A stretch of DNA of 64,000 nt, from contig NC_086383.1 in NCBI RefSeq assembly GCF_036588685.1, positions 18,910,001 to 18,974,000 on the forward strand. Reading direction: 5' to 3'. Source of the DNA: Mytilus trossulus. Its lineage: Eukaryota. Position 1 is the first letter of the stretch; each line of letters starts with the position of its first letter. Below are positions 14,764 to 49,720 of the stretch, one piece after another. The notes beneath the pieces are model-generated. The model was not told where the DNA came from. It saw nothing but the letters and a program-made list of their open reading frames with translations, and searched no databases. The translations under genes were made by a program, and so were the position numbers.

Positions 14764-14932
14764 TGATTCCTTTCACGGATTTGGCTACACTTTTTGGACC
14801 TTTTGGATTATAGCTCTTCATCTTTTATATAAGCTTTGGATTTCAAATATTTTGGCCACGAGCATCACTGAAGAGACATGTATTGTCGAAATGCACATCT
14901 GGTGCAAGAAAATTGGTACCGTTAATTTTATT
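14764..14932 (+). mobile_element. Retrozyme/Penelope-like repeat fragment, family 1
   Basis: Near-identical to the reverse complement of about 45599-45767; carries a hammerhead. Confidence 0.8.
14862..14905 (+). ncRNA. Type I hammerhead ribozyme (minimal, family 1)
   Basis: GCATCA-CTGAAGA-GACA(TGTAT)TGTC-GAAA-T(GCAC)A-TC-TGGTGC: stem I, CUGANGA core, 4-bp stem II, GAAA, short stem III, AUC cleavage triplet. Confidence 0.9.
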
Positions 14933-15777
14933 GTAATTCTTTTGAGATTTATATAATCTTATTCATTCACTGACTTCATATAACGTGTTTTCATGAATGT
15001 CGGACAGAGAATAAATATTATAATGAAAACAGAAATCTCAATAGAAACAGTTATAGTCCTATAAAACAGTGCAAAACTTTCATACAAGCCAAGGAAAGGG
15101 TAATTGAACTCACACCTAAAAGTACAAAATGCATAATTGTTAAATTTGCAGAAACTTTTTTTTCTTTTCTAAAGGGTAAGGAAAATTATACAACAAAGAT
15201 AATTGTGTAATGCCATTATTCAATATTAATATGATGAACACACAAAAGCTGCTTTTTTTAATACCCCAATGAAACCTTGTTTTCCATAAAAAAGATCTTT
15301 TATATATTTACATATGCCCTGTAAGTGCCCCAGTGAAATTGACTCATAAACTATTTCTAAATGCCATAAAACCTGCAGGTTTCCACTTTATTTACATCAC
15401 AGCAGGGATCCAGTTGACAAATGGTGACCTATAATCTCAATGGAGTTATTCATATACTATATTATATAACTCCTGCAGTTAATGTGTAAATAAAATCCAC
15501 TTATGCTTTCACTTTGAAGTCTCAAGATAAGAAAATTTATAGAAATGTGTTAGGAATAAGATAGTCGAAACATATTCATCTAATGTAAAAAGAAGTCATT
15601 AGAAAGTGTTTTTTTAAATTTTTTTTTATCAATTTTCATTTTTAAATATCTGAGTCTTCTTGTGTGGTTACCAGACACCAGCTCTCAAAACAGTGCATTT
15701 AACAAAATCAAAGGACAGGGACCCAGGTCATTTATTGACTTGTACAGTCCAATTTTTCTATTTTAATCTTAACCTGA

Positions 15778-27595: not shown

Positions 27596-30500
27596 AGGAA
27601 TTAATCTCCTCTATTTAATATACAAACAACAAGAGGCATTGATTTTATTACTGCTGCTTGTGTATTGCTCATTTGTTTGTTTTTATTTACCATTATATTA
27701 TTCTTTTATGAATTTTACAAATATTTTCAATTTACAGAAAAAGAAGAAAAAAACTACAGAAAGATTTGGCTGACAACCAACCCATAGAATTGTAAAATCT
27801 GAACAAGAAATCACAGTGGTTGAAAAGATGTTTGGTCTTGACATCAATTTCTTTAGTCTCAAGACTGTCCATTGTTTTAAACAATTGGTATTGACATTTA
27901 GATTCTGTTCATATGTATAAATTTCCAATGGAATCTGCATATTACACAATAATGAGAGTTTCCAAGGACAAAAAGGCAAGATGGCAGATATTCATACATT
28001 GAAAATCTTTGCATTTTAGGATTTTAAATACCTAATGTAACATTCATTCACAATTGCTCATACACACACAGAGAAAACATACTGAAAGAGTTCAGTACTC
28101 ATTATGTGGAAATTTTCTTTCAATTCATTTGAATTCTAATACCATTTGACTTTGATAAGATTTTGTGTTCAATGCTTTCTTTGAGTAAGTCTTTGTTTTT
28201 AATGAAAAACTTTGATACTATCATAGTAACAGAAGGGCTTTTAGATTAATGCCAACACAATGTATTCAGATTTCCTAGTGACTGTAAGATTCGAAGAATG
28301 TGTAATTTTTCCAGGACTACATGTACATGAATTATAATAAAGCTCTTCCAATTTATGGATGCATCTTGAAGGTTAAAGCTAATTTCCATCTTTGTTCAAA
28401 TCATAGTCACTTTTGTGATTATGTGATACATTTAACTAATAGTTTACCAGCCGTCTTAATTATTAATTTGTTTTAATTCTGAGAAAAATCAGTTAACTCA
28501 TATAATTTGCATAATTAGTTCTATTGAGTGTAAATAATTTACAGAAAATTTAGCCATTTTGTAAATGTGATTGTTAATTATAGTCCATGCAACTAGGATC
28601 AAAGTCACAATTTATCTGACTTATTCTCAAGTCTAATGTATTAATCACAAAAAACAAGCAATTAACAATTCAGACTTCATAATTTGCATTTCAATATTCG
28701 TTAAATGCAGTCTCTATTAGAAAAAAATTAACTTATTGCAATATAACATTAACACGGTCTGACGGTTTCGTTTTTTGAAGATGAATTATTCAGGTAGTGC
28801 AATTGTTGTTTATAAATAATTCACAGTTGAACAGATGAGTTATTCGAAATTTAAAATTGGAAGGCTGATCCACGTTGATGGTGGGTTTTTTTTTCATGTC
28901 TCTGCGTAGCATTATAGTAGCATACATCAATGATTAGAAGTAAATACTAATGACTAGTAGGACTTCACTAATGACTGATGTAATATAAACCTTAGAGAAC
29001 ATTATACAAACCTAAAGAGAGACTCAAAAGATACAAATAGTCAAAAAGGATACTTAAAAAATAGCATAGATAAAGCATTATACAAACAAAATGGGGGAAT
29101 AGATAGAAAAGGACAATCATGCAGATGAAAAGACCATAATGTTTAAAATAACCTTGGTTTCTTTGATAAAAATTTCAATCCAACTACCTATTGAGGGCTG
29201 AAGGACCTTTTTTCAGATGTTGGAATTGAGGAATTTGGGATTTGGGAATTTATCATTATCATGCTGCGGGAATGGACACATTCTTATCATCAGAATTCAG
29301 GATTTGGCATTGATTTTCTCATGAATTTCAGGATAAGACCCCCTTTTTTTCCCTTCCTAATCCCCCCTTTTTCTTGTCATTAGGAAAAGCATACAACATT
29401 CTACACTTGAACTACTAATCCTGCACTAAAGCACAGTTGAGTGTAGTACTGAGAATTTAGATGGCAATAGATAATTGAGCTAGTTCAATCTCCTATCTAA
29501 TCACAAAGTCAAGAAACTTAAATCCCCCCCCTTTTTTCTTGTCAATAGGAAAAACACATGACATTCATTATTCAATCTACCAATCCTACGTTGATGCAAA
29601 ACTGATAGAAGCACTGAGAAATTGAAAATTTAGAAGGCATTAGAAGGCAATAGATAATTGAGCTAGTTCAATCTCCCTTCTAATCACAAAGTCAACGAAA
29701 CTTAAAACTGAAATCAATTTCCAACAGGTTTTCTTCCCAATTATTATCAACAAGTGAAGAAAATTGTCAATAAATTGTGATCTTTCTAACACATTTTTCC
29801 TACTGAAACCACCTGCCTATTTCTCCATTAAGACATATTTTCCGTGGTGACAAATTTTCACGTCATTTTTAAACAACTAGGGGGTCAACATAGCTTTAAA
29901 TTTCCGATATAAATTGACCTGCTTGAATTACAGTGTCGAGGTGACAGAACACTATGCATATAATTAGGGTGCTTAGAATCTCGGAGCATTCAATTATTTT
30001 CAAGCTACTGAGGACAATTTTGATTTAATCTGTCATGGAGCGGAAAGCATATAACGCCAAATTCAATAATCGTAACAAAAGCTTAAGCCGAGTGACCACT
30101 CGTTTATTTTTATTTGTCACGATGGAAATGCAATAAAAACGCTGTCGTGAGAACTTATTTAAATACAATTGTCCACTATTATTTGGACCATGATTACTAA
30201 TCCATGCTGGAATGTCCCTAATAAATTCAATTATATCAATTTCTAAGTGATTCTATTAGAAAAACTATCAGAGATATTTTTGTAAATAGTTTACAATGGT
30301 AATGGGTTTTCACACTTCAGAGTCAATTAGATATATATATTCTCCATCTGCTTAACAGGAAAATAATTCATTGAACACAATATACTGCTATTTTATAAAA
30401 ATACCGATGACAATAGTAGAAGGTTGGTCGTTGTACAGGTATAAAATGACAGGAGTCAGTTTCACAAAAAAACTTACCACTAAGATTGATCGTAACTACA

Positions 30501-31983
30501 CTGAATTGTTCATGACTTACAATCAATCATTCTAAATAGTAAGTTATTTTGTGAAACCAACTTCAGGTATCCAAATCAAGCATGAATTTACAGTATATAT
30601 ACAGCTGTTGTTCAAAGCTTATACAGTGGTGGATCCAGGGGGAGAGTTCAGGGAGTTGGACCCCCCCCCCCCCCTTTTTTTAACGATCTATGCATTTGAA
30701 TTGGGACATAGGGTTGGAACCCCACCCTTTAATCCTGTGTTCTTCAACATGATGATTTATTTTTTGACATTTTTCAGTGTTGATTTTGTTATTATAGCTT
30801 TTGTGTGTGTGTTTTTTTTTAAGGGGGAGGGGGTCTCGGTTTATCTCTCCCTTCTTTACCTTGACAATTACTCAATGTGATCCAGATTAGCAATCAATCA
30901 ATCACATCAAATGTCATTATCTAGATACATTGATGTTTGCCTTGTTCTTTGGAGGTTTTTTTTAAAAGGGGGGTGTTCTATTGACTTCTTCTACCCAATG
31001 TCTCATGATTATTCTTATGTAATCTTTAGCATAATAATAATTTTGTCAAGTTTATGCTAACTACGAGTTTTTGAAATTCTGTACATTTATATTTTCTTGG
31101 GCATATTATACATAACCAGTGCCTGAGAATATGAAGTACTTCAAACAACTGCTGCCAGCTCTGACAAGACACAGATATATGCCCATTAAGATAAGAATAT
31201 ATGCAATCCAATGATAAGATACAATTACTTAGAATTCCAATGACTTAATGCAATGTCAAGATTGAGTGACAGACCAAGGCTCACAGTTAATAAACAAGTA
31301 AAGGCCATCTCAAAGTTTTCTCAACAAATATATGGGACATCAATCTCAAAGCGTTTTTCTGAGTCATTAAATATTGTTAATGTATAACAGAAATTAAAAG
31401 AAGAAAAAGTGGATGCTGACCCGTGAATTTGTTTATTTTCCTGGGTATTTAATTTGTGGATTGAAAAAAAATTGTACAATTTGGTAAATATTTTCATGTG
31501 TTTGCCAAAGTATGCATACTTCAGTTGATAGAAAATGAGTACATCATTAATTTTTTTAATGTGGTTAACCTGTACCAAATAAAATCCACAAAAATGTATA
31601 TTCTGAATAGGAAGAATAATCAATCCATAGAAGCTAAAAAATTACTTATTTGAAAATTGTTTTCTTGCAGAAAATTAAATTGATAACATATATATATTTA
31701 CTATTGTCTTATGTAAAAGAAAAACAAGCCTTATCTTACTAGCATTATCAAGTGTATAAACTTTCATACTATCAACTCTACAGGGTAAAATGTTATTAGC
31801 GGAAATAACAATATCATCTTACAAATTACTAAAACATTTAAAGCAATCAACTTTGGGACATTCAAGATATTCTGCAACTGAAAACATCAGGTAACCAGAT
31901 AAAGATGTTCATCATTATCTTTTAAGAACAGATTCGGCAGATAAGACATTTCAAGTTACAGTGATGGAATAAAATCACTAAAA

Positions 31984-32520
31984 ATCAGGGATCGAAATAC
32001 ACATAATATCTGTCAAATTATTATCAGGGATTGAAATACACATAATATCTGTTAAATTATTATCAGGGATCGAAATACACATAATATCTGTTAAATTATT
32101 ATCAGGGATCGAAATAAACATAATATCTGTTAAATTATTATCAGGGATCAAAATACACATAATATCTGCTAAATTATTATCAGGGATCGAAATACACATA
32201 ATATCTGCTAAATTATTATCAGGGATCGCAATACACATATTACATAATATCTGTTAAACTTTCATCTACATATATGATTTTCTTTGGAAAGAATTGTAGG
32301 TAAGCGTTACAGAAATGGAATAAAATCACTAATAATCAGCTTCAGGGATCGTAATACACATAATATCTGCTAAATTATTATCTACATGTACGTAGATAAG
32401 ATATTCCAAAGTACAGCAACAGAATTAAAACACTAATAATCAGGGATCGAAATACACATAATATCTGTTAAATTATTATCAGGGATCGAAATACACATAA
32501 TATCTGTAAATTATTATCTA
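31984..32520. repeat. 39-bp minisatellite
   Basis: ATCAGGGATCGAAATACACATAATATCTGTTAAATTATT. Confidence 0.95.
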
Positions 32521-33047
32521 CATGTATGATCTATGACTTACATAAATCATGGTAGATTAACTGGATCCCTGTCTCACAAATCAAACAACATAGGTAATTT
32601 TTATAGTTTATATCTACTGATACCTATAGAACATGCTAGTTATGTTTATATCATTACATGTAACAGGAGGTATACATATCGTATGGGGGGTCCGTAGATT
32701 TACTCTCACTAATGCTACCTATAAATTGTAACTAATTATTTCCTTTTCAGAAATAGAATGGTGACTAAACAAAATCAACTTCACTAAAATGAATTCACAA
32801 TTTCTCATAAATTCAGTTATTGTTTTTTTTAGTTTTTTTCCCATTTTTTTTTTACAATTTTATCAGCTGAACAGATGTTTGTGAAACAAATATTTTTTCC
32901 ATTTTTTTTTTAATTTTTATAAAAAAAAAATGAATCTATCAACAGTTACAAGCAGATGTTGTAAGAGTTTGTTGGTAATTAAAATTATGGTATTTTATAA
33001 ACTTTGAAAAACAGCTCTGATTTGGTTTTGTAAATCAAATTCTTGAA

Positions 33048-33259
33048 GGGGCCTCAGTGGCCGAGGGATCTAAGTAGTTACTATACTGTAATCATTAGCG
33101 AGTCAACTCTGCGGTTGTGAGTTCGAAACCTGCTTGTGATGATGCACTCGACTCCAATCATTATTGACTAGGATTGAGAGTTTTCCTATCAAAGGTCGCC
33201 ACGAAATAACCTAAATGCGGTCTTTAAAAGTGGCGTTAAAACACTAAAAATCATATCAA
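33048..33259 (+). mobile_element. tRNA-headed SINE (V-SINE-like), internally deleted
   Basis: A-box-like TGGCCGAGGGATC (33058), B-box GTTCGAAACC (33121-33130), AAAGTGGCGTTAAA tail; imperfect 16-bp TSD AAATCAAATTCTTGAA / AAATCTAAATCTTGAA. Confidence 0.8.
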
Positions 33260-34289
33260 AAATCTAAATCTTGAACAAAGCTTTAATATGTCAAATTAGG
33301 AGTATCCAAAATTTACTTATACAGAATTAAACCAGTCTAAACCAGGGAGTTGAGTCAATGCTGACCAATAAATTTAGATTCTGTATTTTTTTCAAGAGTT
33401 TTACTTTAAAGAATATTAATGAAATACAGGAAAGGTCATGCAACAACTCAAAAAATAAAATGTTGAAAAACATTTGCTTTTAGAAATCATGAAATTTATA
33501 TTTGGCCATTTTTTTGTCACAACATTATATGATAATATTGCAATCTTACACATTTAATATCTCCCTTATGGCACCTCAACATTTTGTAACATGTATGCTT
33601 TACCCTGTTGGATGAAAATCAAGAGATAACAGTGAAACACTGCCAAGATTTGTTTTGCTTTCTTCTCAGATTTTTTCTCACAAAAAATGAATTGTGCCGA
33701 GAATGCATACATGTTAATGTTCAATTCTACGAAATATGCATATTACATATGCTTTGTTTTCTTTCCAACTTAATCAATTTTATGTCATATAAACATATAA
33801 ATGGCAAGAGGTAAATGTATATGTAATTAGTTTTTTGTTTTGTTTTGTTTTTGTTTTTTGTTTTTTTTGTTTTTTTTTAAATAACATAATAGACTGTTAA
33901 ATGTTCTGAAGGTCATTTTCATTAAATCTTTTTAGAAATATATTGAATAAGTAACAATAGAACATGACTGTCATATGTTCTTTATTACGGGTGGGTAGTT
34001 AATGTGCAACAGAAAGAATTAAATTTCTGTATATAAGATAGGCAAATTGGCCAATGATATATACTACCTTTTCTATCAAGTTTGAAATACGATATAAGAA
34101 CTGCCACTAATATTAATGCATATAGTCTTGCATTACATAATTACTACATGAAAAAAACATATTTTATTTCACTACTTGTTAGTTTTTGTAGTATATACTG
34201 TTGCACTATCATTTTACTCAAAATATTTTGTTTCACTACTTCATAGTTTTTGTAGTAACTGACTTCTCACAAAATACTGTATAACAAAA

Positions 34290-35630
34290 TTGTTGTACTA
34301 TCGTTTTACTTTTTACTCATTTTGTAACATGCCCTCTGTCAACAAATATCTTTTTAACTTGACAACAACATAGTAGTACATTAATTATACAATTCATGGC
34401 ATTATTTGCGTATTGCTATCATTTTACTTTTACAGTAAATTGCCATTATTTAGCATGCCCCTTTGATAAATATCATTTCAACTTGACAACAATATATTTG
34501 TACATTAATTATACAATTCATGGCATTAACTGCGTTTTGCTATCATTTTACTTTTACTCATTCTTTAAGCTTGCCCCCTTTGACAAATATCATTTTATCT
34601 TGAGAACGACATGAGTATCACAATTATACAATTCATGGCATTATCTGCGTTTTGCTATCATTTTACTTTTACTCATTCTTTTAGCTTGCCCCCTTTGACA
34701 AATATCATTTTAACTTGACAAGGACATAATTAAGTATAACAATTATAAGATTCATGGCATTATCTGCGTTTTCCTATCATTTTACTTTTACTCATTCTTT
34801 TAGCTTGCCCCTTTGACAAATATCTTTTTAACTTGACAGCAACATATAAGTATCAACATAATACGACTCATGGCATTATCTGCATTTTGCTATCATTTTA
34901 CTTTTACTCATTCTTTTAGCTTGCCCCTTAGACAAATATCTTTTTAACTTGACAACAACATCAGTATCACAATTATAAGATTCATGGCATTAACTGCGTT
35001 TTGCTATCATTTTACTTTTACTCATTCTTTTAGCTTGCCCCCTTTGACAAATATCATTTTAACTTGACAAGGACATAATTAAGTATAACAATTATAAGAT
35101 TCATGGCATTATCTGCGTTTTCCTATCATTTTACTTTTACTCATTCTTTTAGCTTGCCCCTTTGACAAATATCTTTTTAACTTGACAGCAACATATAAGT
35201 ATCAACATAATACGACTCATGGCATTATCTGCATTTTGCTATCATTTTACTTTTACTCATTCTTTTAGCTTGCCCCTTAGACAAATATCTTTTTAACTTG
35301 ACAACAACATCAGTATCACAATTATAAGATTCATGGCATTAACTGCGTTTTGCTATCATTTTACTTTTACTCATTCTTTTAGCTTGCCCCTTAGACAAAT
35401 ATCTTTTTAACTTGACAGCAACATATAAGTATCAACATAATACGACTCATGGCATTATCTGCATTTTGCTATCATTTTACTTTTACTCATTCTTTTAGCA
35501 TGTCCCCTTCGACAAATATCATTTTAACTTGACAGCTATAATTTTACTTTTACTCATTCTTTTAGCATGCCCCCTTTGACAAATATCATTTTAACTTGAC
35601 AACGACATATGAGTATCAACATTACACAAT
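34290..35630. repeat. About 116-bp satellite with 349-bp higher-order repeat
   Basis: TCATGGCATT...CTATCATTTTACTTTTACTCATTC...GACAAATATC; diagnostic variants recur 349 bp apart. Confidence 0.95.
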
Positions 35631-35958
35631 TCACAATTTTGGCACAATACAATTCATCAATAACAAATAAATAATAGTCCGTCTTTCTCAAAACCTCATC
35701 CTAGTTCACGAAATATATTAAAAGTCCATTTAAAATTCCTGTATTCCTTAGATGAACGAGATTGCCACATATAAGATACTACCATTCACTAAAGAAACCC
35801 AAAAATGGCCAATTCAAAATGATAGCGTGGATCATCTTGTTTGTTTGGATTTCAGTGCAATGGCTTTTCTACAAGGTCTCATAACTGAAAACACCCTTTT
35901 AAAAATATGCAATCAAGGTTTTAAGTAAATCTTACATAACAAACATCCTCTAATATAT

Positions 35959-36205
35959 GAGCTGCGTCGGATAGAAATCGACCTAATGCAAGTGTACATG
36001 TAAATTGCTAATACTTTGATGGATTTTGTGACATTCAAATACGAAATTAAAGATGGATGCTGGTCTGATTTGTGGGTATTTGTAATAATTGCATCAATTT
36101 TCAAACAGTTACAGACTTTGGATAGAATTTTTTGCCAACCCAAAATTAGTTAACAGATGTTTGGATATTTATTTGCATTAGGTCGATTTCTATCGGACAC
36201 AGCTC
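35959..36205. mobile_element. Sola-like MITE
   Basis: About 33-bp TIR GAGCTGCGTCGGATAGAAATCGACCTAATGCAA, GAG terminus, ATAT on both flanks. Confidence 0.75.
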
Positions 36206-38125
36206 ATATGTATTAATTGTAACAGGACTGCAATCATTCTATTTTTTTAAGAAATGAAGAAAACTCACAGTTTTGTTTAAAACAATATGAAATAAAAGTA
36301 TTGATTTCCTGAGCAGTCAAATATGATCGAGCCTTTCCCATTTTTCTTTTATTCAATTAAATGTATAATTCAATGAATTTATATATACAATGTATATTTT
36401 CAAAATTCACCATTTAATTAACTCTGTGGAAGGTTATGTTTGGAACAATGTAAATAACATATATTGATTAACTAAGCAGTCAAATATGGGCCTTTCCTAT
36501 TTTTCTTTTATTTAATTATATATGAGTTAAAAGCAATGAATTTATCTATTACATATATTTTCAAAACTCATCATTTAATTAACATAACATCTATAGTCCC
36601 AAAGTTTGATTACTTTATTCCTTGTATACATGTAAGTGGTAAATTCTAAATAAATAACAGTTACGACCTCAGAGGACCTAAATAATTCAAATGCAACATT
36701 ATAACAAAACTTTATAATTAATTTCAGGGGGAAAAAGGGGGGATATATACAAAGGAACAAGCTTTTTCATCATTACAGAACTTTTATAAAAATCACCTAA
36801 TTTATTTCAATAAATCCATTACTTTTTTAAAACAAGAAAATTCCTTAATTTCTAAAAAGGGGGGATATAATAATAATAATAAATTCTTTATTTAAATATA
36901 TGAAATTGAACAAGCTTTTTCATCATTACAGAACTTCTGGCGAAAAAAATGTTTTTCATACATTTTATCCACACCAGCCCTATGCCTTAACTGAAAACAA
37001 TAAAAACTATATGGTAAATCAGTCACTGTTCAATAATTTATTGAAATAAATCCATTATTTTTAACAAGAAATTGACAAATACAAATCTGTTAATTTTCAC
37101 ACTTCTATAAATATAGATTGATTATATATCCCTTAGCTATACAAAACCACAACATGGGAACAGAGTCACCCAGACCATGCCATACAATTCACACAAGTCA
37201 GAATTACACAAACCACAACATTAGAACACAGTCACTGAGACCGTAGTGGATACAATTCAAACTGGTTAACACGTTTTGGGCTAATTTGAAAATCGGACAA
37301 TGTTCCCCGATACAATGACATCACAGTACAAGTCAGATACCTCAGTACAAATTCTGGTAGATTTCACACTTTTATAAATATACCAATAACCCTAGGCATG
37401 TACATGTGTATGATCACTAAATTGAAATACTTGTACAATACAAAAACCATAAAATGAGAACTCAGTCACCGAGACCATAGTAGATACATTTCAAACCATT
37501 GTCTAACAGTCAACATGTTTACAGCTAATTTTATAAGAATCCGCTAATTTAAGAATGCCGTCAATGTTCTGTGATACGATGACCAGTACAAGTAGTACAA
37601 GTAGCTCTAGTGTCTATGACCTCACCAGATCAATACATAATGTCCACCATTTTATCAGCCAGATTATCTTGTATTATATCAAGGCTACTGATTGCTGTAC
37701 TATTGTACAGATAAGTCAGATATATGTCCTTAGGGGGTCAATGTGTTACCCTTTCAATAATATGGGAAATACTTAAACGAGGATCTATCATTTCTGTAAT
37801 TTAATTTTTTTCAATTATTTTTTTCTATTCTTTATTTATAAATACATTTTGTCTCTATTCTTTATATATTTCGCCTATTTCACTGGTGGATCTTGAAATT
37901 TTTCTAGAAAAGGAGGGGCCTGGCCCCCTGAAAAACCCTCTAAAAACGCCTATGTATTTTTCTCTCTTATTCCCCCCCTCCCCTTTTTAATCTGAACTGT
38001 ATTATTCTCTAATCGGTAGACCCCATCCATACCCTCGTAAGGTATCGCCTAAAAATTAATAATATATTGATATATTTATAATTTGTTTATTAATTCGTCT
38101 ATATATATATACCTATCAATAGGAA

Positions 38126-38271
38126 TTTTAGTCCTCAATGCTCTTCGACTTCGTACTTTATTTGGCCTTTTTAACATTTTTGGATTCGAGCGTCACTGAT
38201 GAGTCTTTTGTAGACGAAACACGCGTCTGGCGTATACTAAATTTAGTCCTGGTATCTATGATGAGTTTATT
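38126..38271 (+). mobile_element. Retrozyme/Penelope-like repeat fragment, family 2
   Basis: Hammerhead with upstream context (GCTCTTC ... TTTTGG...CGAGC) resembling family 1; boundaries approximate. Confidence 0.7.
38190..38233 (+). ncRNA. Type I hammerhead ribozyme (minimal, family 2)
   Basis: GCGTCA-CTGATGA-GTCT(TTTGT)AGAC-GAAA-C(ACGC)G-TC-TGGCGT: complete core with GUC cleavage triplet (cut after 38227). Confidence 0.92.
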
Positions 38272-40584
38272 CACAGGTACATGTAACAAGACAACAAGGA
38301 TGGACAGGTGAAGTCTAATTAAAACAGCTAACAAACATTAGATATTGATTTGATTGTCACAAACTCAGAGATTCTAACCTTTGTACAATGAGACAAGAGC
38401 TTGTCTTACCATCAGCCAATTACAAGCACTAAATATATCAGGTATCTTGTTGTTTTGGATTACAACATCATGATCCAATGTTAAACTACTGTGTTTTCTA
38501 TTATTTTGTTTATCATATCTTCAGGTACATGTTTCTTGGTAGGTTTTGTTTATATTGATTAGTTAAGACATTAGATTAGACAATAGATGTTATGTTTAAG
38601 CCATAGTTAGTCAACTAACAGTAGTAGCAGAGCATATTTTCAATGTAAAATATCACCAATTAAAGAAATAAAAGATGAATTTGACATGAATCAGTGCCTT
38701 GCTCAAGTTTCTCACAAATGAAACTGGGAAAAACGGAGGGAAAGACCGAAGCCTTGCAAGTTTGAAAGACAGATGGACAGACATTGAAGGATAGCACTTT
38801 TACCCATCGTGAGGGGCATTTAAAACTTTATATCAGAAAAACAAAATGGTCTTTTTGCACATAATGGGAAGAATTTAATCATATATACAGATATACTGCT
38901 TCTGGTATGATAATAAGCACCATTTTTGGTCTCTACTGAATTATATTGTACATGCAAGTTTGTTTATTACATATATTTGTGACATCTTAGCATTGTTTTC
39001 AAAATAAATCATGTGTGGAGATAATCAAGTTGTTTTTCTCCATTTTAAATATAGTAATTACAATAAGTAACATGCAGAAGTAATTACAATAACCACATTA
39101 ACATTTTCCTACATACTATGTATTAAATCATATCCAATCAGATTGTCACTTAATTAATTCAAGCTAAAAATAATCTCTAAATTAATTCACACTAAAAATA
39201 ATCTCTAATTCATAAATTTTATATTTTGATGGATTGTTTACCAGTGGAGCTTAAATTCAAAAGAGTGTTTTTACCATTTAAAATTTGTTTATTCATTAAT
39301 ACATTAACAATAGATATTTTACAGAAAAAATATATGATACAAATGTATCTATGATAATATTCAATTTCAGCAAAAATTCATTATTATTCGTGGGATTTGT
39401 GGAATTCGTTGTTACAGATGAACTAAGAAATTATATGTTCAACAAATAAGAAATTTCCTATAGCTAATCTGTTGCCTTTGGCAAAAGTAGGAAATCAAAT
39501 ATTCACCATAATGCAAGGATTTCAATCCACGAAAATCCAGGTACCCACGTAATAAATGATTATAAAATTGAGAATGGAAATGGGGAATGTATCAAAGAGA
39601 CAACAACCCGACCATAGAAAAGACAACAGCAGAAGGTCACCAACAGGTCTTCAATGTAATGAGAAATTCCAGCACACGGAGGCGGAGGAATCCACAATAA
39701 GATCCTTAATGCAAATAGATATATAACTAGGATTATTTTTTCTTCAAATTTTCATATTTTGATGGGTTGCTGTCTAAGAAAACATGAAGTTAAAACATCT
39801 ATTCCAAAACCGAATGAAGGATGGAATCAAAACCTGTTTTAGCCATTGATAACAGATCTTCAATTCAGATTCTGATTATCAGCTCTGGACAGAAATAAAC
39901 ACCTGAATTATATAATTCTTTTATAACCATGACAATAATGAAACAATATCAATGATTAAAATTAATGATGACTGAACCCTGCTTCTTTATAAGCCGTAAT
40001 AACATAAGATAATTTTACATGTTCTATCCAGAAGTACACATCTTGTTTAAAAGCCTATAATAACACAAGAAAATTCCACATGTTCCATTGAGAAGTACAG
40101 TGTTTAGACCCTCATTTACATATAAATTATAATCTTATCAACTAATACTTGATACATTTCAATCAATATAAGATGATCATATTTTCAAATGTGTAAAAAT
40201 GATCAAGGCCACGCTATAAAATTTTGAAATGGCTTACAACTTGTAAAAATCTATTGTCCTTTGGTGGGAGTAATTCTTGTTTAACGATTGTCAGGTATTT
40301 AAATCTTTAAAGCTTCAAATATCACCTCAGATAATTGATTGTAAGACAGGTAGAATTCTGAATTCAAATAGTTTTTATAGATCTCGGGTTGTTTTAAAGC
40401 TGTTAAAATTAAAGTAAAATTAATCACATGTATTACGGGTAACAAAAAAGGGGGGTTAAAAATATAGACCAAAACAAGCATAACTCGGAGAGGTGATATT
40501 GGATCAGGTAAATGTTGAAGGTGAGGAAGAGATTTTTATTACCCTTGTCCCCTCTCTAAGCCTAAGCAAAGAAACTTTTAAGTG

Positions 40585-41220
40585 TCAACCCCCATGTTAT
40601 CAAGGCCCCAGGAAAAGAACCCCTGTCAAACCCCATGTAATCTAGGCCTTATGAAGGGACCTCTGTACACCCCCATGTAATCTAGGCTTCCAGGAAGGAA
40701 CCCCTATCCACCCCCATGTAATCTAGGCCTTATGAAGGGGTCCTATCCACCCCCATGTAATCTAGGCCTTAGGAAGGGGTCCTATCCACCCCCATGTAAT
40801 ATTGGCCCTAGGAAGAACCTCCTGTACACCCCATGTAATCTATGCTATAGGAAGAACCCCCTGTCCACCCTATGTAATGTAGGCCTTAGGAAGAAAATCC
40901 TTGTCCACCCTCATGTTATCCAGGTCCTTAAGGAAAACAACCCCTGTCCATCCTTGTGTAATCTAGGCCTAAGGAAGGGACCCTTGTTCACCCTATGTAA
41001 TCTAGAACCACTGGCATCCACAATGTAATCTAGGCCTTAGGAAGAGTCACCCTGGCCATCCCCATGTAATCAAGAACCACTGGCATCCACAATGTAATCT
41101 AGGCCTAAGGAAGGGACCCTTTTCCACCCTATGTAAACTAGAACCACTGGCATCCACAATGTAATCTAGGCCTTAGGAAGAGAACCCCTGGCCACCCCCA
41201 TGTAATCTAGGCTTTAAGGA
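40585..41220. repeat. About 40-bp minisatellite
   Basis: CCCCATGTAATCTAGGCCTTAGGAAG. Confidence 0.9.
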
Positions 41221-42756
41221 AGAGAAGCAGCTGTTACTGTTACACATGTAATGCAGCATCTGTATAGTTTACAATACATTTTTAACACTCCAAGGTCTCA
41301 TGGCAATACCAGAATACACTATTAAATCATCAAAATGTAATCACTTATACATCAATGTGAAAGTAAAACAAGAACAACCTAAAATAAGGAAATAATCAGA
41401 TAACATCTTGTCATTGATTTTCTTTTTTTAATAAGTACATTGTACATGTTTGTTTAAGATATTTCTTTTAGCAGAATTTCACAGAAAAAAACATTCCTTG
41501 ATACTCAGGCAATCCCACCAACAAAGACTTATTTGGGCCAAATTTTAAGTTTTTTTGTGTTTTTTCATAATTTTTCTTCATTTTTTTTAACATGATTGGA
41601 ATTATACAGATTTATTACACAAACTTCCTATGACTACATATAGAGCTATTGAGACCTATTCATTTTTGGAGGAAAGCTTATTAGATTTTGTCAGAGTGAA
41701 TGTGAAGTTTGATTTAGAGTGACAGTCCCCCCCCCCCTTCCCCCTCTTTTTCCAATATTAAGTGATGTAAGATAAATGTATAGACTTTTTTTTGCCAGGG
41801 TCCTCCTTTTTTTAAATCCTGGACATGTATGTTATGGATTATTGCACTTACGAAATGAGGGATTTTTTTAAAAGAAAATTTCCAATAAATAAGATTAAAC
41901 CATAAATAATTACCTTTATAACTTAAATTTGTTGAATAGATGATAGATCAATGAAGGTGCCAGTTTAAGAAAATGAAGTTTAGTGACTTATTAGAAACAT
42001 TTGTTTAACCTTTTTTTTTATATTGCCTGTAAATGGCATATAAAGTTCAATTTATCAAAGTAAAGTAAATCTAGAAAGTTTTAAAATACTAGTTGTACTT
42101 TTACATTTTATATATGAATTTCAGTTTTTCATTTCATTAACATAAAATTCTACTCTGTTAAAATAATTTATACATAGATGAGGGTGGTATTAAGAATTAT
42201 TTTCGTGCAACATGTTTTGTCATTTTTATTTCACGTGCAGTCGTGAAAAAGGTTTGTTATTCACCGTGTTTCTTGAAATTGGTAAAAAGATCAACGTGCA
42301 AGAAGTTTTTAATTGTTTGTTCATTGTGAAATGGCAATTTTATTTCTTGATCTTTGTGCAATCCCCTTACCCCCCTTTATGACCCTCATAAATTTTTAAA
42401 TTTCAAAGATTGAGAGCATCATCATAGAGTATGTCAGATTTATAATTGTGTTATTTCATGAATCAAATTTTTTTACCACAATAATTTATACACCAACTGA
42501 ATTTCATTCCTTCAAAATTGTCCATTCACTTAACATTCTCTCAAAATTATTCATTCACTTTCAATCAGATGTTATAAAAGTTAATATATATGTAATGATC
42601 ATTTCCTTATTAAGTGTGAGTTGCTGACATAATTTTCATATATATTGCATGCATCTGTTATAATAGTAGTAATTTCATATAATTTCTATTTAACCACAAA
42701 ACTTAAGGTACCAAAACAGAAGGTGCTAATTGACATTATCACCAAGTAGAAAAGTT

Positions 42757-42868
42757 CAGATAGAATTTTGGCCAAATTTTTCTGACCAAAAGTCACAGAT
42801 AGAATTTTGGCCAAATTATTTTGACCAAAAGTCACAGATAGAATTTTGCTCAAAAATATTCTGACCAA
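42757..42868. repeat. About 40-bp repeat, 3 copies
   Basis: CAGATAGAATTTTGGCCAAA...TGACCAA. Confidence 0.9.
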
Positions 42869-45600
42869 CTACAAATTTTTGTAATAAACATCATACTACA
42901 TTATACAAATGAAACAAATGTGTATGGTCAGGGAAAGAGCCATACCTGAACACATATAATGACAGCTTACCTGTAAAAATAATAATCCTAAAGTATTGAC
43001 CACAGGTATACAAAAAATGTGGCTGGTCAGTTAATAAATCCAAGGAATTATATTACACAATAATTCCACAAGTTGCCATGTTGTGTCATAAATCAGCACA
43101 CTACAGTGTAACCTGGCATTGACCAAGGAGAACTGTGGTCAATGAACTGACCTGACCATTGATGACCAACAAGCTGGACAAGCCAGGTTCAATCACCCTA
43201 CAAACCACATGTTGGTCAGTTAAACTGTGAATCTATGTCAGTTCCACAGGTGAAATTGATCTAATTAAATTCTTATCTATCCAAGATTAGTGTATTGCAG
43301 TTAATTCCCAAGTGTGTATTGGTCAGCCAGACACCCTCTGGTCATCAGTCAATCTTAAAGACAATGTTCAGTTTGTACAACAATTTCACACATAACACTG
43401 GTCATTCAGGTATGAAGTCATGTGACTTTACATAACACAGGTCTGACTGGACAACAATCATTATTTATTCCCTGAGGGTCAATAATACACCTGACTAGTC
43501 CTTAAATGATTTAAATCTAATACACAAACACTGGACATTCATATTGGCTAAAATATTCTTTGAAGTAGCGTTTTAAGCCTTTCTAGTGTAAACTATATAC
43601 AATAGATTGAGTAGAATGGAAGTCTAGGCAATTTCAAATTGTTAAATGTTATTTTATCAAATGTATACAGCCCTTTTTAAATAATCTCTTTCTAAAAACG
43701 TATTTTAAACGTAGGGACACGACCATATCCCAAGGATTGGCTTTAATGTTATTTTATCATTCTTTTAACAGTAAACATCCATTTGTTTATTTACAAAATA
43801 AATCCTCTGATAAAAATTTTAGACAGCCCTGAAATTGACATACATGTAAATCATGTTTTTTGTTTAATGTATTAATTCAGAAACTCATTTTTTAACCTTT
43901 CATATGAATTAAACTGATTTTTTCTCAATGTCACAAAAATTAAAATCTCATTTTAGTCTAAAATGACAAATTGCAATAATAAAAGCACGCAATAATGTCT
44001 GAATTCACAGTACCTCTTTTTTTTTATCCACATTGGGACCTTTTATAGACTTTTTTGTCCAGCCACTATGTAAACAAGCTGATGAATCATGTACTTTTCA
44101 GGCCAGACATAAACTGACAACAAAATGTTCATCAATTGCATTGTTTCAGTCTTCCAATTGACCATATACCAAAGACAATAAATTCCAGCTTATAATTTTT
44201 AACCTGGGCATTCATGGTTGGCCATTTTCCCCACCCACTGATTTTTTCTCATTTTTTTAAAAATGAAAATAAAATAAATTCTTTAGGGATTATATCAAGA
44301 ATACAACAGTTGTTTTCCATTCATTTCATTGGTTGATAAAATCTAACGATTCGATTTTGTAAATTTTTTGTAGACCTGCACTAATTAAGTAAGGTCAGTT
44401 TTGCCACTTATTTTTTGGGGGGATCTATCTTTATCCTGTAAATGCCGAATTATAGACACCTGTTGTTATTAAACTGAAGTTTTTGGCTTGGCCTAAAATG
44501 TGTATTGATCACAAGATGGACAATGTCCAGACAATTTCTCATTAATTGATAATAATCAAACATCTGTTGTACTTACTATTTCATTAATAAACAAGATCTG
44601 GTGTATTGTAAGTTTATGTGTCCAATCAAAAGTTAGGTTTATTATTCCATACATCAAAAGACATTAGTTTAAAAATGAAATTAAAAAATAAAAAATATAT
44701 AAAAAAAACATGATTCTAAAAAATAAGTTCTTCCAATTTCTCAGAGTGAATTTCATGAAGATTAAACCTTCCAAAGATATTAAAAACAAAATTTGTAGGA
44801 AAAACAAACAACGATGGTGTACTTACCAGTGGCAGATCCAGAACTTTTCCTAATGGGGGCCTACTGTCTGGGGAGGGGGGCGGCTCCCCTAGGGCCCTCC
44901 TCAAGATCCGCCTATGCTCACAGTGGATTCATTTATTTTTTAGGGTACTAAAATTTTTGTGGATTTATGAAAACTTGCAATAAGCGGGTATTTGATTTCA
45001 GGGTTTTGCCAAAGTCTGAATACTCCATTAAATTTGTCACTTGTTGAACATTCATAAATAAGGGGTTCACGAAACACATGAAAAGCTGGTATCCAACAAA
45101 AAAATAATGAATCCAAAGTATTGAAAAATTTTGTTGATCCTATAAGAATCAAGTTGTTAATGAAGAAAACTCTAAAAGTGTTTGCTGAATCATCAAAACA
45201 ACAAAATACATCACAATAAAAGCTGGAAAATGAGAAAAAAAGGTAAATTGAATGTGTAAATACATTAGAACTTACAAAAGCAATCCACAGTATCTTCTGA
45301 GAGACACTGCTGAGAAAGAATTTGTAACTTAAGAATCAATTTCATATCTCAATACAACAGCCTGTATGTCAATTAAGACTCTAATTTACTTTCATCCTCA
45401 GCAATATTTACAAGCAAAACATGCCATCCTTTAATTATTCAAAGTGAATATGATTTAAGATAGAATTCACAGGAACTAGGAATTGAGTGATTGTTGGTGT
45501 GTGTTTTAATGCCACTTTTAAGCGGCACTTTCTCAGGCTATTTTGTGGCAGTAAGTTTTTATGGGTGGAGGAAGTGGGAGTGCCTGGAGAAAACTACCAA

Positions 45601-45908
45601 TAAAATTAACGGTACCAATTTTCTTGCACCAGAGGCGCATTTCGACAATACATGTCTCTTCAGTGATGCTCATGGCCAAAATGTTTGAAATCCAAAGCTT
45701 ATATAAAATATGAAGAGCTATAATCCAAAAGGTCCAAAAAGTATAGCCAAATCCGTGAAAGGAATCAGAGCTTTGCATGAGGGAGATACATTCCTTAATT
45801 TATAATAATTTATAATATTTTGTAACAGCAAATTTTAATAACACAAAAAATCCGTATTTTCATGCCAGTACCGAAGTACTGGCTACTGGGCTGGTGATAC
45901 CCTCGGGG
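45601..45908 (-). mobile_element. Retrozyme/Penelope-like repeat, family 1, inserted into a V-type SINE
   Basis: Hammerhead plus UUCG hairpin; flanked by ACCAA direct repeats (45596-45600, 45909-45913); the SINE is contiguous once it is removed. Confidence 0.8.
45626..45669 (-). ncRNA. Type I hammerhead ribozyme (family 1, stem III mismatch)
   Basis: Minus strand GCATCA-CTGAAGA-GACA(TGTAT)TGTC-GAAA-T(GCGC)C-TC-TGGTGC; core intact, U.C mismatch in stem III, CUC triplet. Confidence 0.85.
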
Positions 45909-46133
45909 ACCAACCTTTGATAGGAAAACAAACAATCCTAGTTAAGTGCACTTGCACGAGCAGAGTTTGAAATCCCATCCTCAGTGTTTGCCGACTAGTG
46001 ACAGGAGCAAGGAAAACAGTCTGCTCAATTCTTTGCAGAAGTTAACAAATGTTTCATAAATTTCTTGATCCAGTTGCTCAAAAACAATTTTGGAAAGACG
46101 ACTATATAGGTTTAAGCAAACATATAACAAAAT

Positions 46134-46285
46134 CAGTGGCAGATCCAGAGGGGGGTTCCAGGGATTGGACCCCCCTTTTTTTTTGGCCGATCAATGCATT
46201 TGAATGGGGACATGTAGTTCGTTGGAACCCCCCTTTTATTTTGGGTTGAGAACGCCCCTTTTTAAAATGGCTGGATCTGCCCCTG
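46134..46285 (+). mobile_element. CAG-MITE (CAGTGGCAGATCCAG TIR), 5-bp TSD AAAAT
   Basis: TIR and exact TSD; internal ATCAATGCATTTGAATGGGGACAT core. Confidence 0.85.
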
Positions 46286-46754
46286 AAAATTGTCTGAAAA
46301 ATCTGAGCTAGTCAACTTTATTTGCCCGAGAAAAGTACGAATATACTAAAAGACATTAAAAGCAAAGTGCAGACTTAAAGTCATTGTAAATGGCAAGAGA
46401 ACAATGTTGTAGTCTAATCAGGATTAATGTTAAAATGTCAATGAATTCTGTTGACACAGACATGTGTCTCGCCTGTTTTTATAGGACACACAAGTTGAAA
46501 TTCAAATGGCAATGCTAATGTTTACCATTAAACACTTTCAAGGTCATTCAACCATGGCTCATAGGGGGCACTGAGGCCAAATTATCACCACAAAAATGAG
46601 ATGTGTTAACTCTTTATTACCTGTGAGCCAAATATCATTGATTAACACTTGGTGAGCTCATTGGATGTTTCCAACATCGCTGCATAAACTCATGACATTT
46701 GAATCTTGCCTTCACAACTTTATGTGGTATAATAGACAAGACAAAATTTACACA

Positions 46755-49459: not shown

Positions 49460-49720
49460 GTGTTTGTTTAGTTCACGCATCAATGTAAATATAACGGAAT
49501 TTGATGAGACTGTCATCAAAGTGAGAGAGAGGATTAGCGCTATAAAACCAGGTTTAATCCACCATTTTCTACATTTGAAAATGTCTGTACCAAGTCAGGA
49601 ATATGACAATCCTTGTCCATTTGTTTCTGATGCGTTTTGTTATTTGATTTTGCCATGTGATTATGGACTTTCTGAATTCATTTTCCTCAAAGTTCAGTAT
49701 TTTTGTGATTTTACTCTTTT
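49460..49720 (+). mobile_element. Family A-related variant D
   Basis: Shares TGTACCAAGTCAGGA with family A; distinct flanks. Confidence 0.5.

What the first reader, a model, noticed from the sequence alone, without database searches (positions are those of the whole stretch)
38190..38233. Intact minimal hammerhead ribozyme hidden in non-coding DNA
Seen: all catalytic core nucleotides (CUGAUGA, GAAA, GUC), 6-bp stem I with two G.U pairs, 4-bp stem II, and a stem III (ACACGCGU) one base from the palindrome ACGCGCGU. Known: minimal type I hammerheads with palindromic stem III occur in Penelope-like elements and metazoan non-LTR retrozymes, and are thought to cleave as dimers. Inference: relic of a self-cleaving, circRNA-based retroelement.
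Basis: partly seen in the sequence, partly recalled or inferred. Interest (0 to 1): 0.8.

Follow-up and report, generated by a model that had tools for sequence, protein, structure and literature searches.

The report
Dead truncated copy of mussel retrozyme
The hammerhead ribozyme motif is real, but it sits in one short, broken-off copy of a known and very abundant non-coding jumping repeat of a mussel-like genome, so it is ordinary.

Summary
The motif at 38190-38233 (+) is exactly as described: full hammerhead core, 6-bp stem I, 4-bp stem II, stem III ACACGCGU. It is not a chance motif. It lies in a 152-nt repeat copy (38120-38271) that matches the 3' part of a 354-363-nt tandem and dispersed repeat. 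This 1.30-Gb genome holds 18,881 exact copies of the ribozyme with the palindromic stem III and 553 with the window's G-to-A variant.

The family fits the published non-LTR retrozymes of mussels: about 350-nt AT-rich units, one type I hammerhead each, and no gene. The architecture is the canonical metazoan type I, not the "minimal" Penelope type.

The window copy is solo and 5'-truncated. It has no second ribozyme, so it cannot release a circle. It also lacks the segment that follows the family's fixed 3' end. In 44 of 46 insertions read, the copy ends 43-52 nt past the cleavage site while the 5' start varies, which is a reverse-transcription footprint. A Naiad-type Penelope-like element in the same genome ends at the homologous point and shares the roughly 60-nt module that follows it.

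Cleavage and transcription of this locus are not shown. Earlier agents of this scan reported the same family and footprint on other DNA of this genome. Verdict: already known, low interest.

The parts
38120..38271 (+). Solo, 5'-truncated retrozyme copy. It corresponds to unit positions 1-152 of a 363-nt unit that I numbered from window 38120.
   Evidence: Own-genome DNA search: all matches are confined to query 171-326, that is window 38120-38275, at 86-97% identity. Local alignment to a natural unit of the C7 array gives window 38120-38271 = unit 1-152, and the upstream similarity is unconvincing AT-rich sequence. BLAST extension to 38275 is a chance 3-of-4 match.
38190..38233 (+). Type I hammerhead ribozyme motif (unit 71-114).
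   Evidence: Sequence. RF00163 at 28.8 bits, model positions 1-45 of 45.
38190..38195 (+). Stem I, 5' strand GCGUCA. It pairs with 38228-38233.
   Evidence: Across 72 distinct family sequences, 95.4% of cells are paired, and pair 17-60 changes on both sides (GC to AU) in 13 sequences.
38196..38202 (+). Core CUGAUGA.
   Evidence: Core letters are intact in 34 of 38 copies found by DNA similarity.
38203..38215 (+). Stem II hairpin: GUCU, loop UUUGU, AGAC.
   Evidence: 97.2% of cells are paired, and two pairs change on both sides (UA to AU) in 13 sequences.
38216..38219 (+). Core GAAA.
38219..38226 (+). Stem III region ACACGCGU. As a monomer it forms A38219-U38226 and C38220-G38225 with a 4-nt loop. 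In sister copies the 8 letters are self-complementary.
   Evidence: Pairs 48-55 and 49-54 are 98.6% paired, and the inner palindromic pairs are 96.5% paired.
38221..38221 (+). Private difference: A here, where 32 of 33 sister rows have G. It lies in a CpG context.
   Evidence: The same variant occurs 553 times genome-wide on different loop-2 backgrounds.
38227..38228 (+). Predicted self-cleavage site, between C38227 and U38228. Inferred, not shown.
   Evidence: Position follows from the hammerhead core (GUC followed by the 3' strand of stem I). No read evidence of ends was available because only contigs could be laid.
38228..38271 (+). 44-nt tail from the cut site to the family's fixed 3' insertion end (...GAUGAGUUUAUU).
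   Evidence: 46 insertion 3' ends were read. 44 lie at unit 151-160 and 2 diverged copies end at 143 and 148.

Best explanation
Window 38120-38271 is one dead, 5'-truncated, single copy of a very abundant non-coding retroelement of the non-LTR retrozyme kind. Full elements are head-to-tail arrays of 354-363-nt AT-rich units, each with one canonical type I hammerhead.

Published for a mussel, not shown here: array transcripts cut themselves at successive hammerheads into unit-length RNAs, which a tRNA ligase circularises.

Inferred here from the insertion footprint: a reverse transcriptase starts cDNA synthesis at one fixed point 43-52 nt downstream of the cleavage site, on an RNA longer than one unit or circular, and runs 5'-wards for a variable distance. 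This gives arrays when it runs more than one unit and truncated solo copies when it stops early.

The window copy is such an early stop. It keeps 70 nt upstream of the ribozyme, the ribozyme itself and the 44-nt tail. With only one ribozyme it cannot release a unit or a circle. It also lacks the conserved module that lies just 3' of the end point in full units, so it should not be copied again.

Since insertion it has picked up four private substitutions. One is a CpG-type G-to-A at 38221 in the stem III palindrome. That position is a loop position in the monomer fold, but it would put two A.C mismatches into the 8-bp helix of a two-ribozyme dimer.

If the + strand were transcribed, the motif might still cut after C38227. 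This is untested, and nothing suggests a host function.
For: - The motif and its coordinates are confirmed.
- Homology is confined to 38120-38275, and sister copies are 95-97% identical.
- Arrays exist with 363-nt period (C7, 8 units), 354-355-nt period (15 and more than 40 units on C1) and about 350-nt period for the second family.
- Genome-wide there are 18,881 exact palindromic copies and 553 copies of the A variant, with controls 0.
- Units have 36.9-39.8% G+C, and the longest stop-free stretch in a dimer is 83 aa or less.
- 44 of 46 insertion 3' ends lie at unit 151-160, while 5' starts are scattered from unit 1 to about 345, including arrays.
- Stems I, II and III are 95-99% paired. Both-side changes at 4 pairs separate the two ribozyme families, which are otherwise only about 71% identical over 255 nt.
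- There are 4 private differences in 152 nt.
- The monomer hammerhead fold energy is the same for the window and a natural sister copy (-5.7 kcal/mol). The stem III 8-mer self-duplex is -13.3 for the sister against -8.1 for the window, and the latter is in a shifted register.
- The literature matches: mussel retrozymes of 350-390 bp, two similar ribozyme families, circRNA, kobs about 0.1 per min (PMC7229834). Penelope-like elements show strong 5' truncation, partial tandems and a 30-40-bp tail (PMC8557442).
Against: - No tool named the organism, and I could not compare with the deposited mussel circRNA clones. Identity with the published family is therefore inferred from layout, not sequence.
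- No cleavage, circle or transcript was shown here. Only assembled contigs could be laid. In the one run on record as RNA, contigs cover the repeat but not its flanks, which DNA carry-over of a roughly 19,000-copy repeat would also produce.
- No target-site duplication was visible at 22 junction pairs read by eye.
- The both-side changes are each essentially one event (family 1 against family 2).
- The 72 aligned ribozymes were pre-selected by a core pattern and partly by Rfam's model, so core invariance there is by construction.
- Arrays could also grow by unequal crossing-over.
Confidence: 0.9

Rival explanations
1. The copy, though solo, is an exapted, working self-cleaving ribozyme that processes a host transcript, as proposed for a few conserved hammerheads in amniote introns.
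For: The core letters are intact. The monomer fold energy is unchanged by the 38221 substitution. Contigs of a second coded organism run from both flanks 10 and 25 nt into the element, so the insertion may be shared between relatives.
Against: The copy has four private substitutions in 152 nt, like neutral decay. The same 38221 variant arose 553 times elsewhere. There is no ORF of 120 aa or more in the 64-kb window, and nothing coding-like appears among the 9 ORFs of 70 aa or more in 30000-46500. The RNA run shows depth 0 on 37723-38091 and 38297-38460. The contigs of the other organism do not meet the tool's 31-letter bridging rule.
Confidence: 0.03
2. The motif is the pseudo-LTR hammerhead of an autonomous Penelope-like element inserted here.
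For: Penelope-like elements carry type I hammerheads near their 3' ends (PMC4209133; PMC8557442). This genome holds at least 150 GIY-YIG matches, many in open frames of about 900-1056 aa.
Against: The 64-kb window has no ORF of 120 aa or more. Homology to other copies stops at 152 nt. Helix sizes are the canonical ones, not those of the minimal Penelope motif. The two Penelope-like families I examined have no hammerhead by my core pattern. These are L081 with its endonuclease at the N-terminus, and the group L101 and L104-L108 with a C-terminal endonuclease.
Confidence: 0.02
3. It is a fragment of satellite DNA moved and multiplied only by DNA-level processes (unequal crossing-over, segmental duplication), with no RNA intermediate.
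For: Long homogeneous arrays exist. No target-site duplications were seen.
Against: Dozens of dispersed copies on all large contigs share one 3' end and differ in their 5' start. Their flanks are unrelated to each other. A protein-coding retroelement of the same genome ends at the homologous point.
Confidence: 0.04
4. It is a chance occurrence of the hammerhead core in AT-rich DNA.
For: The loose pattern is not enriched in the window. The score is below Rfam's gathering threshold. Folding is unremarkable.
Against: The 152 nt around it are 95-97% identical to a repeat family. There are 18,881 plus 553 exact ribozyme matches and 0 for the reversed patterns.
Confidence: 0.005

Closest known systems
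Non-LTR retrozymes of the mussel Mytilus galloprovincialis (Cervera and de la Pena 2020, PMC7229834; passages and introduction read)
   Same: [quoted passage not shown] Both families are present in this window. Helix III has 2 bp and a tetraloop, the layout the paper calls typical of invertebrates.
   Different: The window copy is not an array but a 152-nt 5'-truncated single copy. The paper's text has no occurrence of 'truncated', 'solo' or 'rolling', so the fixed-end footprint is not described there. The paper gives about 5000 ribozyme copies from an early assembly, while this assembly has about 19,400 exact-pattern copies of one family alone. Sequence identity with the deposited clones could not be checked, and the supplements with the ribozyme drawings were closed.
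Minimal hammerheads in pseudo-LTRs of Penelope-like elements (Cervera and de la Pena 2014, PMC4209133; passages read)
   Same: Type I topology, palindromic stem III positions, association with retroelements and tandem arrangement, and a proposed dimeric active form.
   Different: The minimal motif has no helix III or loop 3, a long helix II (7-8 bp) and a short helix I (4-5 bp), and it lies beside a reverse-transcriptase gene. Here helix I is 6 bp, helix II is 4 bp and helix III is 2 bp plus a loop, with no gene nearby.
Vertebrate non-LTR retrozymes as non-autonomous derivatives of Penelope-like elements (Li, Clavereau and Pollet 2026, bioRxiv 10.64898/2026.07.22.740005; abstract, Results part 1 and Discussion read)
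   Same: Monomer copies are scattered over chromosomes beside arrays. Retrozymes are related to terminal regions of Penelope-like elements and are thought to borrow their enzymes.
   Different: That work covers vertebrates and links retrozymes to Neptune and Poseidon-type elements. It states that other organisms were not examined. Here the shared terminal module is with an element of Naiad layout.
Naiad clade of Penelope-like elements (Craig et al. 2021, PMC8557442; abstract and passages read)
   Same: The element in L081 has an N-terminal GIY-YIG domain, a CxC motif, reverse-transcriptase motifs, a 4277-nt head-to-tail tandem and many 5'-truncated copies with one 3' end, as described for Naiads. 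The retrozyme copies share that insertion style and the sequence around the end point.
   Different: Naiads are reported to lack canonical hammerheads and to prefer (TA)n targets. The retrozyme has a hammerhead and shows no (TA)n bias: 1 of 37 insertions upstream and 2 of 37 downstream, against 95 of 2000 control 25-mers.
Newt and salamander satellite 2 hammerheads (as summarised in PMC7229834 and PMC4209133)
   Same: Type I hammerhead in tandem repeats of about 330 bp, with a short helix III and a palindromic loop that allows a two-ribozyme dimer.
   Different: The amphibian motif has a 1-bp helix III and needs the dimer. The present family has 2 bp, and the mussel repeat is reported to cut as a monomer.

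Membership tests
Hammerhead ribozyme, type I (Rfam RF00163) | Conserved core: CUGANGA, GAAA, A15.1-U16.1 pair, and a cleavage-site nucleotide that is not G. | tested here: met
   All are present at 38196-38202, 38216-38219, A38219-U38226 and C38227. The residue numbering is the standard one, recalled and as used in PMC4209133.
Hammerhead ribozyme, type I (Rfam RF00163) | Three helices around the core, with helix I open (5' and 3' ends in helix I). | tested here: met
   Helix I has 6 bp, helix II 4 bp and helix III 2 bp plus a 4-nt loop. Pairing is kept in 95-99% of cells over 72 family sequences.
Hammerhead ribozyme, type I (Rfam RF00163) | Score at or above the curated gathering threshold (34 bits). 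| tested here: not met
   The window copy scores 28.8 bits. A natural sister copy differing only at 38221 scores 32.5. 42 other family copies score 34.8-40.9 bits. The shortfall comes from the loop-2 and stem I letters of this subfamily plus the 38221 substitution.
Hammerhead ribozyme, type I (Rfam RF00163) | Self-cleavage activity. | not testable with these tools
   This needs in vitro transcription or reads with true ends. Only contigs were available.
Metazoan non-LTR retrozyme (PMC7229834) | Type I hammerhead inside short tandem repeats of about 170-400 bp. | tested here: met
   Met for the family: arrays of 354-363-nt period. Not met by the window copy itself, which is a single 152-nt fragment.
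Metazoan non-LTR retrozyme (PMC7229834) | Low G+C (under 45-50%), no LTR, no coding capacity. | tested here: met
   Units have 36.9%, 39.8% and 38.0% G+C. The longest stop-free stretch in a unit dimer is 83 aa.
Metazoan non-LTR retrozyme (PMC7229834) | Expressed as linear and circular unit-length RNA. | tested here: inconclusive
   In the one run on record as RNA, 169 contigs lie on 38092-38296 and depth is 0 on the adjacent flanks. One loose end continues into the upstream part of a full unit. Contigs show neither circles nor ends, and DNA carry-over is not excluded.
Metazoan non-LTR retrozyme (PMC7229834) | Co-occurrence with autonomous Penelope-like elements. | tested here: met
   150 GIY-YIG matches were scored, all over Pfam's cut-off, many in long open frames. 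One was examined in detail.
Minimal hammerhead of Penelope-like elements (PMC4209133) | No helix III or loop 3, helix II of 7-8 bp, helix I of 4-5 bp, located in the pseudo-LTR next to an RT-endonuclease gene. | tested here: not met
   Helix sizes are 6, 4 and 2 bp plus a loop. The window has no ORF of 120 aa or more.
Naiad-type Penelope-like element (for L081, the proposed helper; PMC8557442) | N-terminal GIY-YIG endonuclease linked by a CxC motif to a C-terminal reverse transcriptase, with 5'-truncated copies and partial tandems. | tested here: met
   GIY-YIG scores 28.1 bits at residues 30-120 of a 903-codon open frame. The translation holds a C-D-C motif and Y-I-D-D and G-I-P-M-G motifs (the naming of these motifs is recalled). 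The tandem period is 4277 nt. 13 truncated fragments end at L081 3858-3866. The weak point is that Pfam RVT_1 reaches only 14.3 bits against a cut-off of 29.6, and the PDB sequence search gave nothing relevant.

The most novel reading that the evidence does not exclude
The mussel-type hammerhead retrozymes, including the family this copy belongs to, may be copied by Naiad-type Penelope-like elements, a clade that itself lacks hammerheads.

Both retrozyme families and a Naiad-layout element of this genome end their genomic copies at the homologous point: a U-rich end just before (AC)UAC(A)ACCA. All of them carry the same roughly 60-nt hairpin-forming module immediately 3' of that point (GUCGAUGYC...CUGCUGGUGGA...CCCCGAGGGYAUCA).

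The module would position the reverse transcriptase on a more-than-unit or circular RNA and would not itself be copied in the last unit. This would explain why short copies like the one in the window are dead on arrival.

The two papers listed by my search for 'Naiad' plus 'retrozyme' link retrozymes to Penelope-like elements only in general, or in vertebrates to other clades. Earlier agents of this scan reached the same reading on other DNA of this genome.
Probability: 0.5. Interest if true: 0.45.

Novelty: already known. Interest (0 to 1): 0.15.

Why it matters
For this locus, very little. It is one of roughly 19,000 ribozyme-bearing copies of a repeat kind published in 2020, and it is a truncated, immobile one.

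The family-level footprint is worth more. One fixed 3' end lies 43-52 nt past the cut site, 5' starts are variable, arrays end at the same point as solo copies, and an end module is shared with a Naiad-layout element. This footprint bears on an open question stated in the 2026 preprint: how animal retrozymes are mobilised, and by which autonomous element.

Tried and rejected
- **Chance motif.** Rejected by family homology and genome counts.
- **Longer copy.** A weak upstream match (window 38064-38084 to unit 255-275) looked like a longer copy with an internal deletion. The local alignment is AT-rich and gap-ridden, and I rejected it.
- **Distal extension of stem I.** GGAUU 38182-38186 with AGUCC 38245-38249 pairs in the window's subfamily, but only 61.1% of cells are paired over 72 sequences. 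The second family needs a shifted register, so this is not established.
- **Target-site duplications.** None were seen at 22 junction pairs read by eye. No statistical search was made.
- **(TA)n targeting.** Reported by earlier notes for other families, but not found for this one. 1 of 37 insertions has it upstream and 2 of 37 downstream, against 95 of 2000 control 25-mers. The TA run 6-8 nt upstream of the window copy is therefore probably incidental.
- **Link to a Penelope-like family with a C-terminal endonuclease.** A hammerhead 1.1 kb downstream of its gene in L101 proved to be a separate retrozyme insertion. Five other copies of that element lose homology about 200 nt after the stop codon and have no core pattern.
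- **5' starts at the cleavage site.** Four of the insertions start at unit 107-115, near the cut at 108/109. They do not start exactly at it, and the interval was chosen after seeing the data, so I make no claim.
- **Family 2 in Rfam.** Rfam does not detect the second family's ribozyme at E up to 0.1.
- **Dimer energy.** My scripted evaluation of a full two-ribozyme dimer failed and returned a nonsense value. I dropped it and kept only the 8-mer duplex figures.
- **Organism.** Not named by any tool. 'Mussel-like' rests on three things: run labels 'mollusc metagenome' and 'gill metagenome' among the holders, the fit to the published mussel family, and earlier notes. That mussels of the genus Mytilus have 14 chromosome pairs is recalled.
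- **One search count.** The script printed 29 of 38 intact. Reading its rows, 5 of the 9 flagged copies keep all core letters (two-letter overhang or one-letter shortfall of my extraction, or changes in stems only), so the count is 34 of 38.
- ** rows.** The 33 rows include up to three units of the C7 array read twice from overlapping loci.
Full report
**Observation.** The sequence at 38190-38233 (+) reads GCGUCA CUGAUGA GUCU-UUUGU-AGAC GAAA C-ACGC-G UC UGGCGU.
- Stem I has six pairs with two G.U wobbles.
- Stem II has four pairs.
- The cores CUGAUGA and GAAA and the triplet GUC are present, and the predicted cut is after C38227.
- The stem III region is ACACGCGU.

Rfam's type I hammerhead model aligns end to end on exactly these 44 bases at 28.8 bits, with E 5.9e-5 for the 661 bases given. 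This is under the curated 34 bits, so the whole-window scan at gathering level returned nothing. By my arithmetic, that E-value scaled to a 1.3-Gb genome would be about 100 for all families together. The motif alone therefore proves little. In the same direction, the loose core pattern is not enriched in the window (2 found, 0.56 expected), and the 44-mer folds no better than shuffles (z -1.03).

**What it belongs to.** The window is G000:C11:18910001-18974000 of a 1,298,590,643-base assembly.
- A scan of that genome with the Rfam model gave 71 matches among the 74 candidates scored, 42 of them over the cut-off.
- BLAST of the window against those loci showed that only window 38119-38275 is shared with them.
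- A DNA search with 37950-38450 found 58 matches. 57 of them are confined to query positions 170-344 (nearly all 171-326), most at 94-97% identity, and one is the window itself. They came from 3151 first-look candidates, of which 40 were scored.
- In many places the copies stand head to tail: eight units of 363 nt on C7, and arrays of 354-355 nt with 15 and with more than 40 units on C1.
- Exact-pattern counts over the whole genome are 18,881 for the ribozyme with stem III ACGCGCGU and 553 for the window's ACACGCGU. The reversed control patterns gave 0.
- Units have 36.9-39.8% G+C and no open frame longer than 83 codons, even across the unit boundary.

A second, related family has the layout GCAUCA CUGAAGA GACA...UGUC GAAA UGCGCA UC UGGUGC. 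It has about 350-nt arrays and is about 71% identical to the first family over 255 nt. It has two truncated copies in this same window.

**Structure support.** I aligned 72 distinct ribozyme regions from both families and counted pairs for the hammerhead structure.
- Stem I is 95.4% paired, stem II 97.2% and stem III 98.6%. The inner palindromic positions are 96.5% paired.
- The whole structure is 87.2% paired, against 20-45% when the partners are slid.
- Four pairs change on both sides: GC to AU in stem I, UA to AU twice in stem II, and CG to UA in stem III.

Each of these changes separates family 2 from family 1, so it is about one event each, not many. The sequences were also picked with a core pattern, and partly through Rfam's model, so the invariance of the core in this alignment is by construction. 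A less biased count comes from 38 copies found by plain DNA similarity. All core letters are kept in 34 of them (corrected by reading the rows). These copies are young, so this says little about selection.

**The window copy itself.** Aligned to a natural unit of the C7 array, it covers unit positions 1-152 only. The ribozyme is unit 71-114 and the cut follows unit 108.
- The copy differs from at least 80% of 33 sister rows at four places: 38130, 38147, 38176 and 38221.
- Only 38221 lies in the ribozyme. It is A where 32 of 33 rows have G, in a CpG context.
- The same change is found 553 times on different loop-2 backgrounds. It is therefore a recurrent decay mutation, not a lineage marker.
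- In the monomer fold, 38221 is the first loop position of helix III, and the nearest-neighbour energy of the hammerhead fold is the same as for a natural sister copy (-5.7 kcal/mol).
- As an intermolecular 8-bp helix, the sister's stem III gives -13.3 kcal/mol. The window's gives -8.1, and only in a shifted register that would lose the A15.1-U16.1 pair.
- The substitution costs 3.7 bits in Rfam's model (28.8 against 32.5).

With a single ribozyme the copy cannot release a unit-length RNA.

**Insertion footprint.** I read 46 insertion 3' ends of this subfamily.
- 44 lie at unit 151-160. Two diverged copies end at 143 and 148, where the alignment may stop early. One array ran off the stretch fetched.
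- Arrays end at the same point as solo copies.
- The 5' starts are scattered: unit 1, 19, 23, 38, 43, 107, 114, 114, 115, 138, 169-191 (six), 224-244 (ten), 257-345 (the rest). Insertion lengths run from 152 nt to more than eight units.
- Flanks are unrelated to each other, and I saw no target duplication and no (TA)n preference.

A fixed 3' end with variable 5' truncation is the signature of reverse transcription started at a defined point of the RNA. Insertions longer than one unit that still end at that point require a template longer than a unit, that is a multimeric or circular RNA. These last steps are inference.

**Which enzyme.** The genome has at least 150 GIY-YIG endonuclease matches, many in long open frames. 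I examined one, L081 on C10, which is a 4277-nt head-to-tail tandem.
- It has the endonuclease at the N-terminus of an open frame of at least 903 codons (28.1 bits).
- The frame also holds a C-D-C motif and reverse-transcriptase-like Y-I-D-D and G-I-P-M-G motifs (the motif names are recalled).
- This is the Naiad layout of PMC8557442. Pfam's RT model reaches only 14.3 bits.
- It has no hammerhead core pattern.
- Thirteen truncated fragments of related elements, found by chance in my loci and at window 49461-49719, end at L081 3858-3866.
- All three retrozyme units align with L081 just beyond that point. The shared block ACUGCUGGUGGA...CCCCGAGGGYAUCA scores 43, against a maximum of 34 in 300 shuffles. 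By eye, the preceding UACAACCA...GUCGAUGUCA is shared too.
- The retrozyme end point (...UUUAUU|UACAACC), the family-2 end point (...UUUUAUU|ACUACC) and the Naiad end point (...ACUUUUU|ACUACAACC) fall at the homologous place.
- The shared block is predicted to fold into a similar hairpin in three of the four sequences.

This supports, but does not prove, copying of the retrozymes by Naiad-type elements. It also explains why a copy that stops before the previous unit's module, like the window's, should be immobile. A second Penelope-like family, with a C-terminal endonuclease, showed no link.

**Reads.** All 24 runs offered were assembled contigs with coded names. 'Mollusc metagenome' and 'gill metagenome' were among the holders. 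I laid four runs on 37600-38800.
- The one run on record as RNA put 169 contigs on 38092-38296 and none on 37723-38091 or 38297-38460.
- One of its loose ends continues into the upstream part of a full unit. What is in that library therefore comes from full units elsewhere, not visibly from this locus. DNA carry-over of so abundant a repeat cannot be excluded.
- Contigs of another coded organism cover both flanks with about 5% differences and run 10 and 25 nt into the element. This hints that the insertion is shared between relatives, but it falls short of the tool's 31-letter bridging rule.
- Contigs cannot show RNA ends, so the cleavage site has no read support.

**Comparison with what is known.**
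- PMC7229834 (passages and introduction read) describes, for the mussel M. galloprovincialis, about 5000 type I hammerheads of two similar families in 350-390-bp repeats. It reports abundant circRNA, monomeric cleavage at about 0.1 per min, and circularisation by a tRNA ligase. Everything I could test fits, but I could not compare sequences because the supplements were closed and I had no access to the deposited clones.
- PMC4209133 (passages read) defines the canonical metazoan type I motif with exactly this helix layout and distinguishes it from the minimal motif of Penelope-like elements.
- The 2026 preprint 10.64898/2026.07.22.740005 (abstract, Results part 1 and Discussion read) shows scattered monomers beside arrays and relates vertebrate retrozymes to terminal repeats of Penelope-like elements.
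- The word search for 'Naiad' plus 'retrozyme' found three papers, two of them listed. Neither of the two I read ties retrozymes to Naiads.

**Earlier notes of this scan.** Unchecked AI notes had already reported, on other DNA of this genome, truncated mussel retrozyme copies with a fixed end, Naiad-like ends, and a conserved hairpin after the end point. I found the fixed end before reading them. Their Naiad lead made me follow up the weak L081 match.

**Verdict.** The object is an ordinary, dead, 5'-truncated copy of an already published kind of element. The only part with some wider interest is the family-level footprint and the shared end module with a Naiad-layout element.

Noticed in passing
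window 14761-14933 (+), ribozyme at 14862-14905: A 5'-truncated solo copy of a second retrozyme family (CUGAAGA core, stem II GACA/UGUC). It is 97-99% identical to about 350-nt arrays on C1 and ends at the homologous fixed 3' point. Its stem III carries a G-to-A in a CpG, like the copy studied. Rfam finds nothing here at E up to 0.1.
   Followed up: partly
window about 45599-45775 (-), ribozyme at 45669-45626: A second copy of that family on the opposite strand. Here the 16.2 position of stem III is changed (UGCGCC), which breaks a pair. I did not test its claimed SINE target or duplication.
   Followed up: partly
window 49461-49719 (+): A 5'-truncated fragment related to the Naiad-layout element L081: 81% identical to L081 3605-3860, ending at that element's fixed 3' end.
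   Followed up: partly
unit 221-241 of the 363-nt retrozyme unit (for example in L038); not present in the window copy: A perfect 8-bp hairpin (GUCAGCAC-UUUUU-GUGCUGAC) coincides with a cluster of 5' truncation points: 10 of the roughly 46 starts lie at unit 224-244. This may be a pause site for the reverse transcriptase. No statistics were done.
   Followed up: no
L081 3870-3900: Compared with the retrozymes, the Naiad-layout element carries an extra, nearly perfect hairpin (about 10 bp) inserted inside the shared end module.
   Followed up: no
L101 1380-1435 and 1605-1724: A retrozyme copy with an adjacent inverted partial copy lies 1.1 kb downstream of a Penelope-like gene. Inverted truncated partners are described for Penelope-like insertions, so this may be one for a retrozyme.
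   Followed up: no
window 31978-32238 (-) and 40732-41028 (+): Two short ORFs made of tandem peptide-like repeats (CISIPDNNL(A/T)DIM-type repeats; GLRKGSYPPPCN-type repeats). They are probably minisatellites rather than genes.
   Followed up: no
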